From Octopus bimaculoides (taxonomy: Eukaryota), in assembly GCF_001194135.2 (NCBI RefSeq), contig NC_069003.1, positions 9,779,613 to 9,843,612 of the forward strand: DNA of 64,000 nucleotides, read 5' to 3'. The translations under genes were made by a program, and so were the position numbers. The first letter of the stretch is position 1; every line of letters starts with the position of its first letter. Shown piece by piece: positions 18,510-18,568 of this stretch. The notes under the pieces are model-generated. The model did not search any database. It had not been told where the DNA came from and worked only from the letters and a program-made list of their open reading frames with translations.

Positions 18510-18511
<2 letters not shown>

Positions 18512-18568
18512 GATTGTCACATGCTGATGATGGGTTACTACCCAGAAACCCGGGTCTGTGTGTATCAC
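18510..18568 (+). ncRNA. Type I hammerhead ribozyme (copy 2, best preserved)
   Basis: gtgat tgt cacatg CTGATGA tgggt tact accca GAAA cccgggT C tgtgtg t atcac; stem II 5 bp perfect; palindromic stem III ACCCGGGU; cleavage predicted after 18556. Confidence 0.88.

What the first reader, a model, noticed from the sequence alone, without database searches (positions are those of the whole stretch)
18510..18568. Intact type I hammerhead with palindromic stem III (dimer-type)
Seen: CUGAUGA (18524-18530), perfect stem II UGGGU-uacu-ACCCA, GAAA (18545-18548), ACCCGGGU palindrome, GUC cleavage triplet (cut after 18556), 6-bp stem I plus a distal 5-bp extension. Known: self-complementary stem III is the hallmark of newt satellite 2 and PLE-type hammerheads that cleave efficiently as dimers. 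Best candidate in the window for an active ribozyme; the copy starts exactly at the ribozyme 5' arm.
Basis: partly seen in the sequence, partly recalled or inferred. Interest (0 to 1): 0.9.

Follow-up and report, generated by a model that had tools for sequence, protein, structure and literature searches.

The report
Hammerhead ribozyme in a retrozyme repeat
The motif is a real, sequence-intact self-cleaving hammerhead RNA carried by a 357-base non-coding repeat of the kind already known from newts, flukes, corals and mussels, so it is a new example of a familiar thing, not a new kind.

Summary
A hammerhead descriptor finds only this motif and one homologous copy (1410..1352, minus strand); 0.02 hits per window are expected by chance. 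The motif opens a 357-nt non-coding repeat unit. The window holds five fragments of it: solo copy A (18510-18779), solo copy C (22164..21936) and a gapped tandem array (2069..1186). Copies A and B1 differ at 11 of 59 hammerhead positions. None of these touches the 13 core nucleotides and all 18 base pairs survive (P about 4e-4 under random substitution). Copy C keeps the helix III palindrome through a double compensatory change. The architecture matches the published canonical metazoan type I hammerhead. The unit (357 nt, 44.5% GC, tandem, strongly self-paired as a circle, z = -4.2) fits non-LTR retrozymes. In silico, the single-hammerhead fold is 8-13 kcal/mol above the minimum, while two copies of A cofold into a double hammerhead. 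This favours dimer-type cleavage, but copy A is solo and truncated and has no partner in cis. Other caveats: no Rfam hammerhead hit, a U10.1-A11.1 pair, no copies found outside the window, and activity untested. Verdict: a new member of a known kind, of modest interest.

The parts
18510..18514 (+). Distal helix I, 5' strand (GUGAU); first bases of repeat copy A
   Evidence: Pairs with 18564-18568; 100% paired in the copies that have it. Similarity to copy B1 begins here.
18515..18517 (+). Helix I internal bulge (UGU) opposite U18563; candidate loop 1 for tertiary contact with loop 2
   Evidence: Identical in copies A and B1. Its position after a 6-bp proximal helix I matches the canonical metazoan type I layout (PMC4209133). 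The contact itself is inferred.
18518..18523 (+). Proximal helix I, 5' strand (CACAUG)
   Evidence: 6 pairs with 18557-18562. Five of the six pairs differ between A and B1, and every one still pairs; two changed on both sides.
18524..18530 (+). Catalytic core C3-A9 (CUGAUGA)
   Evidence: Exact consensus, identical in A and B1.
18531..18544 (+). Helix II hairpin UGGGU-UACU-ACCCA (U10.1-A11.1 closing pair; loop 2)
   Evidence: 5 Watson-Crick pairs. B1 keeps pairing through a G.U. C has an A.A at 10.1-11.1. B1 and C have loop UAAAUA, compared with CAAAUA in the Sm1-derived N79 ribozyme.
18545..18548 (+). Core G12 A13 A14 and A15.1 (GAAA)
   Evidence: Invariant in all three copies.
18548..18555 (+). 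Helix III, the 8-nt palindrome ACCCGGGU. Alone it gives 2 bp plus a CCGG tetraloop; between two ribozymes it gives an 8-bp duplex.
   Evidence: Self-duplex energy -14.9 kcal/mol. The cofold minimum of two copies of A is the double hammerhead. Copy C has ACUCGAGU, a compensatory palindrome. Copy B1 has ACCCAGGU, with the centre broken at a CpG.
18554..18556 (+). Cleavage triplet GUC; predicted scissile bond between C18556 and U18557
   Evidence: The NUH rule is met. GUC is invariant in the three copies. Cleavage itself is inferred, not shown.
18557..18568 (+). Helix I 3' strand: proximal UGUGUG, bulged U18563, distal AUCAC
18569..18779 (+). Rest of repeat copy A (unit positions 60-270); the last ~87 nt of the 357-nt unit are missing
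   Evidence: 81-87% identical to the other copies. The copy ends abruptly in (GT)n at 18780.
18466..18509 (.). Upstream compound microsatellite (AT)n(GT)n(AT)3 that abuts the element
   Evidence: A near-identical (GT)n(AT)n tract follows the element at 18780-18827. This is either a possible long target duplication or an insertion into a microsatellite.
18780..18863 (.). Downstream compound microsatellite AT(GT)16(AT)n
1352..1410 (-). Second complete hammerhead (copy B1): core intact, helix III ACCCAGGU, loop 2 UAAAUA; predicted cut after C1364
1186..2069 (-). Tandem array of the 357-nt unit: B3 2069..1953, N gap 1952..1682, (AT)n, B2 1648..1411 (unit positions 120-357), B1 1410..1186 (positions 1-225)
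   Evidence: The head-to-tail junction B2|B1 at 1411|1410 defines the unit length.
21936..22164 (-). Solo copy C (unit positions ~19-251). The 5' half of its hammerhead is lost in a 10-N assembly gap. Helix III is ACUCGAGU at 22144..22137. Flanked by (AT)n/(GT)n.

Best explanation
The motif is a genuine type I hammerhead self-cleaving ribozyme of the canonical metazoan design, as in newt satellite 2 and Schistosoma Sm-alpha. It is the only conserved functional module of a 357-nt, non-coding, AT-leaning repeat that forms head-to-tail arrays. That makes the repeat a non-LTR retrozyme, or satellite-2-like element.

Proposed life cycle (inferred from the family's literature, not shown here):
1. 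Arrays are transcribed into multimers.
2. Each hammerhead cuts 3' of C17 (GUC|U), leaving 5'-OH and 2',3'-cyclic phosphate ends.
3. Helix III alone is only 2 bp plus a CCGG loop, and a competing GGGU/ACCC hairpin is more stable. Efficient cutting therefore most likely needs two neighbouring ribozymes, which pair their ACCCGGGU palindromes into one 8-bp helix III (a double hammerhead).
4. The released 357-nt monomers are ligated into highly self-paired circles.
5. The circles are copied back into DNA by a retroelement enzyme supplied in trans, probably from a Penelope-like element. Insertion prefers (GT)n/(AT)n microsatellites.

The copy at 18510-18779 is a solo, 3'-truncated insertion inside such a microsatellite. 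Its ribozyme sequence is intact, so it could still cut any transcript that runs through it, weakly alone or in trans with another copy. It cannot release a unit-length or circular RNA, so as a mobile element this copy is dead.
For: **Shown here**
- All core nucleotides and the three helices are present in type I topology.
- The descriptor hits only this family, against 0.02 expected per window.
- The motif belongs to a 357-nt unit present as five fragments, including a head-to-tail junction.
- Copies A and B1 differ at 11 of 59 positions. None falls in the 13 core nucleotides and 18 of 18 pairs are kept; P = 4e-4 by simulation.
- 95.9% of cells are paired, against 9-56% when the partners are slid. 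Three pairs changed on both sides: two in helix I and one in the helix III palindrome of copy C.
- The composite unit has 44.5% GC. Its circular fold is -113.4 kcal/mol, z = -4.2 against shuffles.
- The single-hammerhead fold lies 8-13 kcal/mol above the minimum, alone and in genomic context.
- Two copies of A cofold into the double hammerhead at -42.1 kcal/mol, against 2 x -18.6. The helix III self-duplex is -14.9 kcal/mol.
- 5 of 7 fragment ends abut dinucleotide microsatellites, against a 9.5% background.

**From the literature**
- Canonical metazoan type I hammerheads have helix I 6 bp, helix II 4 bp and helix III 1-2 bp with a palindromic loop, and are dimer-active in tandem repeats (PMC4209133).
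- Non-LTR retrozymes are tandem repeats of about 150-450 bp with GC below 45-50% and one type I hammerhead per unit. Mussel units are 350-390 bp. They are expressed as self-paired circular RNAs (PMC7229834; bioRxiv 10.64898/2026.07.22.740005).
- Penelope-like elements show a microsatellite insertion bias (PMC8557442).
- Loop 2 of copies B1 and C (UAAAUA) resembles the CAAAUA of the Schistosoma-derived N79 ribozyme (PMC12550524).
Against: - No Rfam hammerhead model scores either copy, even at E<=10 on short slices.
- The helix II closing pair is U10.1-A11.1, whereas G10.1-C11.1 is described as highly conserved. A pyrimidine at 10.1 removes the purine N7 of the A9/G10.1 metal site (my own knowledge of hammerhead biochemistry).
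- Nearest-neighbour folding disfavours the active monomer fold.
- Only two complete hammerheads and one half are available, so the covariation statistics are thin: 40 of 500 shuffles reach the observed values.
- The assembled array shows only one hammerhead, because of an N gap and a truncation.
- No related copies were found outside the window.
- No transcription, cleavage or circular-RNA data exist.
- No Penelope-like ORF was identified in the window.
- Loop 2 of copy A differs from the other two copies.
Confidence: 0.72

Rival explanations
1. Dead relic. The repeat descends from a hammerhead-bearing element, but this copy, or the whole family today, no longer cleaves. It is just an old interspersed repeat whose motif happens to look intact.
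For: - The copies are only 80-90% identical, so the family is not young.
- All copies are truncated or solo, and copy A lacks 87 nt of the unit.
- The 10.1-11.1 pair is U-A.
- Rfam gives no hit.
- The competing fold is 8-13 kcal/mol more stable.
- B1 has a broken palindrome and C has an A.A at 10.1-11.1.
Against: - At ~19% divergence, an untouched 13-nt core together with 18 of 18 preserved pairs is unlikely under neutral decay (P = 4e-4). At least the lineages that led to A and B1 were therefore under selection for the fold.
- Natural retrozyme hammerheads with a weak base of helix II (U.U in axolotl Amex2) still cleave, better as dimers.
Confidence: 0.2
2. The identity is the same, but the ribozyme works as a single hammerhead, as coral and mussel retrozyme ribozymes do. 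The palindrome in helix III is then incidental: a 2-bp stem with a CCGG tetraloop.
For: [quoted passage not shown] It also reports monomeric co-transcriptional cleavage of a coral ribozyme (~0.8 per min) and a mussel ribozyme (~0.1 per min).
- Copy B1 has lost the palindrome (self-duplex only -4.8 kcal/mol).
- The extended helix I with a bulge, and a Schistosoma-like loop 2 in B1 and C, could supply tertiary stabilisation.
Against: - Copy C changed positions 3 and 6 of the palindrome together (ACCCGGGU to ACUCGAGU). Those positions sit in the loop of a 2-bp/tetraloop hairpin and would not need to covary there.
- The double hammerhead is the cofold minimum for copy A, while the single fold is 8 kcal/mol above the monomer minimum.
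- The B1 change is a CpG transition, the expected decay route.
Confidence: 0.3
3. The unit is a fragment of the pseudo-LTR or tandem junction of an autonomous Penelope-like element, not a separate non-autonomous retrozyme.
For: - Penelope-like elements carry hammerheads in their pseudo-LTRs, insert as partial tandems and prefer microsatellites.
- Retrozymes are reported to be related to those pseudo-LTRs.
Against: - None of the three loci is next to an RT or GIY-YIG coding region. The ORF fragments seen nearby are other elements.
- The period is 357 nt with nothing between the units.
- Most metazoan PLE hammerheads are minimal: no helix III, 6-bp helix II, a bulged base and low activity. This one is canonical.
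Confidence: 0.07
4. Chance resemblance to a hammerhead in microsatellite-rich DNA.
For: - Helix I of copy A is GT/CA-rich like the flanking microsatellite.
- A minimal descriptor is expected about 0.02 times per 64 kb, so hundreds of chance hits would arise per gigabase genome.
- Rfam gives no hit.
Against: - The same motif recurs in homologous copies, with compensatory changes and an invariant core.
- The helices are longer than the descriptor's minimum: 6+5, 5 and palindromic.
- It sits in a tandem 357-nt unit of the expected size and composition.
Confidence: 0.02

Closest known systems
Canonical metazoan type I hammerheads (newt/salamander satellite 2; Schistosoma mansoni Sm-alpha/Sm1)
   Same: - Type I topology with the CUGAUGA...GAAA...GUC core.
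- 6-bp proximal helix I followed by a bulge and a distal helix.
- 4-5 bp helix II with a 6-nt loop: UAAAUA in copies B1 and C, CAAAUA in the Sm1-derived N79 ribozyme.
- Very short helix III with a palindromic loop that can extend into a double hammerhead.
- Residence in a ~330-360 bp tandem repeat.
   Different: - U10.1-A11.1 instead of G10.1-C11.1.
- The bulge is UGU/U, not the Schistosoma loop 1 nucleotides.
- The palindrome is 8 nt (ACCCGGGU).
- Not recognised by the Rfam hammerhead models.
- No primary-sequence similarity outside the core was tested or seen.
Non-LTR retrozymes of invertebrates (coral Acropora ~220-240 bp; mussel Mytilus ~350-390 bp) and axolotl (330/350 bp)
   Same: - A non-coding unit of a few hundred bp, head-to-tail arrays, GC below 45-50%, and one type I hammerhead per unit.
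- The unit is predicted to fold into a highly paired circle.
- Like the mussel ribozymes, it lacks most of the archetypal loop 1/loop 2 nucleotides.
- Like axolotl Amex2, it has a weak base of helix II.
   Different: - Expression, self-cleavage and circular RNA are unproven here.
- Only about 2.5 units of array are visible, and the finding itself is a solo truncated copy.
- The host appears to be a different lineage. It is probably a cephalopod, judged from my memory of its SINE-like repeats, and this is unverified.
Minimal hammerheads of Penelope-like elements (PLE min-HHR)
   Same: - Type I.
- Positions 15.2-16.2 are palindromic and the ribozyme is presumed to act as a dimer.
- Association with retroelements that target microsatellites.
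   Different: - PLE min-HHRs usually lack helix III, have a 6-bp helix II with an extra base after A9, keep G10.1-C11.1, have a short helix I, and cleave poorly even as dimers.
- This motif has canonical helices.
- No PLE ORF lies nearby.
Avocado sunblotch viroid (ASBVd) double hammerhead
   Same: An unstable helix III in the single fold. Two ribozymes in a multimeric transcript pair into an extended helix III, which restricts cleavage to multimers and spares the circular monomer.
   Different: ASBVd is an infectious RNA replicon of plants with hammerheads in both polarities. Here a genomic DNA repeat carries one polarity only.

Membership tests
Hammerhead ribozyme (any type) | Conserved core: C3 U4 G5 A6 N7 G8 A9 ... 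G12 A13 A14, A15.1-U16.1, H17 | tested here: met
   CUGAUGA at 18524-30, GAA at 18545-47, A18548-U18555, C18556. Identical in copy B1, and the assembled part of copy C agrees.
Hammerhead ribozyme (any type) | Three helices around the core, supported by covariation | tested here: met
   Helix I has 6+5 bp, helix II 5 bp, helix III 2 bp (8 bp as a dimer). 95.9% of cells are paired and 3 pairs changed on both sides. P = 4e-4 for core and pairs surviving 11 substitutions. Only 3 sequences.
Hammerhead ribozyme (any type) | Match to a curated covariance model (Rfam RF00163/RF00008/RF02275-7) | tested here: not met
   No hit at gathering score or at E<=10 on 126- and 151-nt slices. This is a detection criterion, not a structural definition. 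No positive control was possible.
Hammerhead ribozyme (any type) | Mg2+-dependent self-cleavage 3' of H17 that gives 5'-OH and 2',3'-cyclic phosphate ends | not testable with these tools
   Needs in vitro transcription and end mapping.
Canonical metazoan type I hammerhead | Helix I open, 6 bp before loop 1; helix II 4 bp; helix III 1-2 bp capped by a 2-4 nt palindromic loop (PMC4209133) | tested here: met
   6-bp proximal helix I, then a UGU/U bulge. Helix II has 4 bp plus a U-A. Helix III is A-U, C-G plus a CCGG loop.
Canonical metazoan type I hammerhead | G10.1-C11.1 pair | tested here: not met
   U-A in A and B1, A.A in C. The pair is highly conserved but not absolute: axolotl Amex2 has U.U and still cleaves.
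Canonical metazoan type I hammerhead | Conserved loop 1/loop 2 nucleotides for the tertiary contact | tested here: inconclusive
   Loop 2 is UAAAUA in B1 and C, resembling the CAAAUA of N79/Sm1, but UUACUA in A. The loop 1 bulge UGU is not the Schistosoma sequence. The mussel ribozymes also lack these nucleotides.
Dimer-type (double) hammerhead | Self-complementary helix III/loop III that lets two ribozymes form one extended helix III | tested here: met
   ACCCGGGU self-duplex -14.9 kcal/mol. Copy C's ACUCGAGU, a compensatory palindrome, gives -10.7. B1 gives -4.8. The cofold minimum of two copies of A is the double hammerhead.
Dimer-type (double) hammerhead | A second ribozyme copy nearby on the same transcript | tested here: not met
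   For copy A the nearest other copies are 3.4 kb away (copy C, opposite strand) and 17 kb away. At family level the array at 2069..1186 is tandem, but only one hammerhead is assembled there.
Non-LTR retrozyme | Head-to-tail tandem repeats of ~150-450 bp, each with a type I hammerhead | tested here: inconclusive
   The B2|B1 junction defines a 357-nt period. The hammerheads of B2 and B3 would lie in the N gap or the (AT)n tract. Copies A and C are solo.
Non-LTR retrozyme | Non-coding, GC below 45-50%, no LTR/PBS/PPT | tested here: met
   GC is 44.5%. Only a spurious 91-aa ORF crosses the unit, and it has no homologue. No terminal repeats are present other than the tandem unit.
Non-LTR retrozyme | The unit folds into a highly self-paired (circular) RNA | tested here: met
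   Circular minimum free energy -113.4 kcal/mol, 63% paired, z = -4.2 against 200 dinucleotide shuffles. This is a prediction only.
Non-LTR retrozyme | Expressed as linear and circular unit-length RNAs | not testable with these tools
   No transcriptome of the source organism is reachable. The pseudo-ORF search and the DNA pattern scans found nothing.
Penelope-like element pseudo-LTR | Repeat flanks an RT + GIY-YIG ORF | tested here: not met
   No such ORF adjoins the three loci. The RT fragments in the window lie elsewhere (44.6 kb and 52-53 kb) and hit Pfam RVT_1 only. GIY-YIG was not searched for systematically.

The most novel reading that the evidence does not exclude
The family could be a functional hammerhead lineage that has replaced the near-universal G10.1-C11.1 pair by U-A and carries a built-in GGGU/ACCC competitor helix. 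The ribozyme would then be strictly off as a monomer or circle and on only in multimers. This sequence class would also be invisible to the Rfam models, and so under-counted in (probably cephalopod) genomes. Alternatively, the solo copy A could have been co-opted as a cis-cleaving element of a host transcript.
Probability: 0.12. Interest if true: 0.5.

Novelty: new member of a known kind. Interest (0 to 1): 0.3.

Why it matters
- It adds a hammerhead-bearing, retrozyme-like repeat family from a genome that looks cephalopod. I found no specific report of retrozymes there in the searchable literature. The closest is a count of 235 Rfam Hammerhead_1 hits in the giant squid genome.
- It shows that covariance-model annotation can miss a structurally complete hammerhead.
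- The family gives a small natural experiment on two points of hammerhead biology. One is tolerance of a U-A pair at 10.1-11.1. The other is dimer-dependent cleavage, supported here by a compensatory change inside the helix III palindrome.
- The kind of element, its likely life cycle and its association with microsatellites are already described, so the gain is incremental.

Tried and rejected
- **Rfam cmscan.** I ran it at gathering score on the whole window, at E<=10 on the whole window and on short slices around both hammerheads. No hammerhead family appeared. The whole-window list at E<=10 is swamped by sub-threshold mir-297/466/3149 hits, which are (GT)n/(AT)n hairpins.
- **External copies.** Exact-pattern scans used a conserved non-ribozyme 29-mer of the unit and the hammerhead itself, against metagenome contigs and viral contigs. 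All returned zero.
- **Pseudo-ORF search.** I searched the spurious 91-aa ORF that crosses the unit against the protein collection, hoping to reach contigs that carry the repeat. It found nothing.
- **LINE RT search.** I searched a LINE RT fragment to identify the organism and fetch more of its genome. It gave 5 weak hits on contigs under 2 kb, which were no use. I left the third protein search unused because these two failures suggest the organism is not in the collection.
- **Literature string searches** for the abundant SINE-like repeat found nothing.
- **ARAGORN** found no tRNA-like part. The bacterial promoter/terminator scan is not applicable to this genome and showed nothing.
- **Opposite-polarity hammerhead.** None was found.
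- **Weak descriptor hit at 32788-32823.** It has helix II 2 bp and helix III 1 bp, which is chance level (0.23 expected).
- **CTGACGAG at 18365-18372.** I considered it as a half-core, but no GAAA partner follows, so I rejected it.
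Full report
**1. The observation**

- CTGATGA at 18524-30.
- Helix II TGGGT/TACT/ACCCA at 18531-44.
- GAAA at 18545-48.
- The 8-nt palindrome ACCCGGGT at 18548-55.
- GTC at 18554-56, so the scissile bond would lie between 18556 and 18557.
- A 6-pair proximal helix I, CACATG (18518-23) with TGTGTG (18557-62). Its two core-proximal pairs are G.U.
- A TGT/T bulge.
- A 5-pair distal helix, GTGAT (18510-14) with ATCAC (18564-68).

The plain pattern CTGATGA..GAAA..GTC occurs at two loci, against 0.2 matches expected. A structural descriptor I wrote (helix I >=4 bp, II >=3, III >=2, NUH) hits exactly twice: here and at 1396..1364 on the minus strand. 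In 300 dinucleotide shuffles of the window the mean was 0.02 hits. A looser descriptor adds one chance-level hit at 32788.

**2. What surrounds it**

The motif is the first 59 nt of a repeat. Blastn and nhmmer find five fragments and no more:
- Copy A, 18510-18779 (+).
- Copy C, 22164..21936 (-).
- A minus-strand array: B3 2069..1953, then a 271-N assembly gap (1952..1682) and an (AT)n tract, then B2 1648..1411 running directly into B1 1410..1186.

The head-to-tail junction B2|B1 fixes the unit at 357 nt (alignment A1). The hammerhead occupies unit positions 1-59. Copy A covers positions 1-270. Copy C covers about 19-251; the 5' half of its ribozyme is lost in a 10-N gap. B1 covers 1-225 and B2 covers 120-357.

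The unit is non-coding. One spurious 91-aa ORF crosses it and has no homologue. A composite unit (B1 + B2) has 44.5% GC. Its circular fold is -113.4 kcal/mol with 63% of bases paired, z = -4.2 against shuffles. In that fold helix I of the ribozyme continues into a long helix formed by the two ends of the unit.

Five of the seven visible fragment ends abut (GT)n/(AT)n tracts. Only 9.5% of random positions in this very microsatellite-rich window lie that close to one. Copy A sits between two almost identical (AT)(GT)~16(AT)n tracts.

The window itself is eukaryotic: AT-rich, gap-ridden, and full of SINE-like repeats, LINE RT fragments and a mariner fragment. From memory, the commonest repeat looks like an octopus SINE. 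I could not verify this.

**3. Is the hammerhead real?**

Copies A and B1 are 81% identical both over the ribozyme and over the rest of the unit. The 11 differences inside the 59 nt are not placed at random:
- None falls in the 13 core nucleotides.
- Five of the six proximal helix I pairs differ and all still pair. Two changed on both sides: C-G to U-A and A-U to G-C.
- The one helix II change gives a G.U.

A simulation placed 11 substitutions with the same transition bias. It kept the core and all 18 pairs in 0.04% of trials.

On the three-sequence alignment, 95.9% of cells pair, against 9-56% when the partners are slid by 1-3 columns. Three pairs carry compensatory double changes. The third of these lies in helix III. 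Copy C reads ACUCGAGU instead of ACCCGGGU, which is still a perfect palindrome. Copy B1 reads ACCCAGGU, a CpG-type transition that breaks the centre.

With so few sequences the shuffle control is weak: 40 of 500 shuffles reach the observed values. The pattern is nevertheless what selection on a hammerhead fold produces, and it means the copies descend from different functional master copies.

**4. How it compares with described hammerheads**

PMC4209133 defines the canonical metazoan type I hammerhead as follows:
- Helix I is 6 bp and helix II is 4 bp, and they interact through loop nucleotides.
- Helix III is 1-2 bp, capped by a 2-4 nt palindromic loop.
- It is a poor cleaver alone and active as a dimer when a second copy is nearby.

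The present motif fits this description helix by helix. Loop 2 in B1 and C is UAAAUA. The Schistosoma Sm1-derived N79 ribozyme has CAAAUA on a 4-bp helix II and a 6-bp proximal helix I (sequence printed in PMC12550524). Copy A has UUACUA instead.

There are two departures:
- The first helix II pair is U10.1-A11.1 in A and B1 (A.A in C). G10.1-C11.1 is called highly conserved. An axolotl retrozyme ribozyme with U.U there still cleaves, better as a dimer.
- No Rfam hammerhead model scores either copy, even at E<=10 on slices of 126-151 nt. I could not run a positive control, so I record this as unexplained.

PLE minimal hammerheads lack helix III, have a 6-bp helix II with an extra base after A9, and cleave poorly even as dimers.

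**5. Monomer or dimer?**

- For the 59-nt RNA alone, the hammerhead fold is -10.2 kcal/mol for A and -8.5 for B1. The minima are -18.6 and -19.5. The more stable fold pairs the GGGU of helix II with the ACCC of the helix III palindrome.
- In 200-500 nt of genomic context the gap is 10-13 kcal/mol.
- Two copies of A cofold at -42.1 kcal/mol into a double hammerhead: both helix II hairpins, an 8-bp intermolecular helix III, and helix I formed in trans.
- The helix III self-duplex is worth -14.9 kcal/mol for A, -10.7 for C and -4.8 for B1.

Together with the compensatory palindrome in C, this favours the dimer mechanism known from newt and axolotl repeats and from ASBVd. It does not exclude single-ribozyme action. 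[quoted passage not shown] I put roughly 55-60% on dimer dependence.

**6. Most likely mechanism**

*Shown:* the anatomy, the tandem unit, the selection signature, the predicted folds and the microsatellite association.

*Inferred from the retrozyme literature*:
1. Arrays are transcribed.
2. Neighbouring ribozymes pair through helix III and cut after C17.
3. The 357-nt monomers, with 5'-OH and 2',3'-cyclic phosphate ends, are ligated into self-paired circles.
4. In a circle the lone ribozyme is held off by the competing helix.
5. The circles are reverse-transcribed and integrated by a Penelope-like element's RT and endonuclease, which prefers microsatellites.

Copy A is a by-product of that cycle. 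It is one incomplete unit inside a (GT)n(AT)n tract, with an intact ribozyme but no partner and no second cleavage site. At most it can cut a read-through transcript once.

**7. Rivals**

- A dead relic (0.2). This is countered by the selection signature, but it remains possible for the present-day copies.
- A PLE pseudo-LTR fragment (0.07). No RT/GIY-YIG ORF lies nearby, and the motif is canonical, not minimal.
- Chance (0.02).
- Monomer mode is a rival for the mode of action only (0.3).

**8. Novelty and score**

Type I hammerheads in ~150-450 bp tandem repeats of animals have been known since 1987. They were recast as non-LTR retrozymes in 2020 and have since been linked to Penelope-like elements. 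This is a new member of that kind. It has three minor peculiarities: the U-A pair at 10.1-11.1, an 8-nt palindrome, and invisibility to Rfam. The host lineage is one for which I found no specific report. A specialist would not be surprised. Interest 0.3.

Noticed in passing
window 12288-12476, 25651-25839, 40828-41016, 54319-54507, 60700-60888 (and partial copies, e.g. 19553-19660, 30819-30926): Abundant ~190-nt interspersed repeat (ACGACGGGCTTCTTTCAGTTTCCGTCTACCAAATCCACTCACAAGGC...CTTCTTACCACACAGCCACTCCTGC). It is almost always preceded by an (AT)n/(AC)n tract. From memory it resembles an octopus SINE, which would make the window cephalopod. A literature string search found nothing.
   Followed up: partly
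window 9706-9916, 10555-10972, 32519-32729, 59539-59946, 60959-61169; inverted copies 33370-33561, 37044-37455, 46537-46935: A second SINE-like family, with a tRNA-T-arm-like GAGTTCAAATTCC box and a conserved ...CTTTGCCTTTCATCC...GGGGTCGATAAATTAAGTACCAG tail. It often occurs as adjacent pairs ~210 nt apart. ARAGORN calls no tRNA.
   Followed up: no
window 52236-53241 (+), 44610-44822 (+), 2-260 (-), 61293-61592 (-), 62251-62421 (-): Decayed transposon coding fragments. Two LINE-type reverse transcriptase pieces hit Pfam RVT_1, one with frameshifts. There are also LINE ORF2-like fragments at the window start and at 61.3-61.6 kb, and a mariner/Mos1 HTH_48 fragment interrupted by an N gap.
   Followed up: partly
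window 2070-2562 (-): The tandem hammerhead array begins abruptly at 2069 inside a coding-like stretch (...FKVGEKIFMSWEDGIIQ; the upstream ORF gives a faint DUF7083 hit, E 0.005). The array may have inserted into another retroelement. No target-site duplication was seen.
   Followed up: no
whole window, e.g. 23797-23867, 40442-40512, 36584-36657, 24649-24723, 58188-58307: Hundreds of sub-threshold Rfam hits to mir-297, mir-466, mir-3149, mir-1277 and others. All lie in (GT)n/(AT)n compound microsatellites that fold into hairpins, and all are below gathering score. They are artefacts of composition.
   Followed up: yes
window 27334-27870 and 49259-49955: Two minisatellites: one with period 9-12 nt (reads as long Asp/Asn- or Met/Ile-rich ORFs) and one with period 8-21 nt (reads as YLSIYLSI...). 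Neither is related to the hammerhead repeat.
   Followed up: no
window 18531-18555 (and 1389..1365 on the minus strand): GGGU and ACCC each occur twice, in helix II and in the helix III palindrome. This creates a competing hairpin 8-13 kcal/mol more stable than the single-hammerhead fold. It may be a monomer-off/multimer-on switch or an accident.
   Followed up: partly
window 18510 and 22164 compared with 18779, 21936 and 1186: The solo copies share a 5' boundary at or near the hammerhead 5' arm but end at different unit positions (270, 251; B1 at 225). This is the reverse of the 5' truncation expected from target-primed reverse transcription of a sense RNA. There are too few copies to judge.
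   Followed up: no
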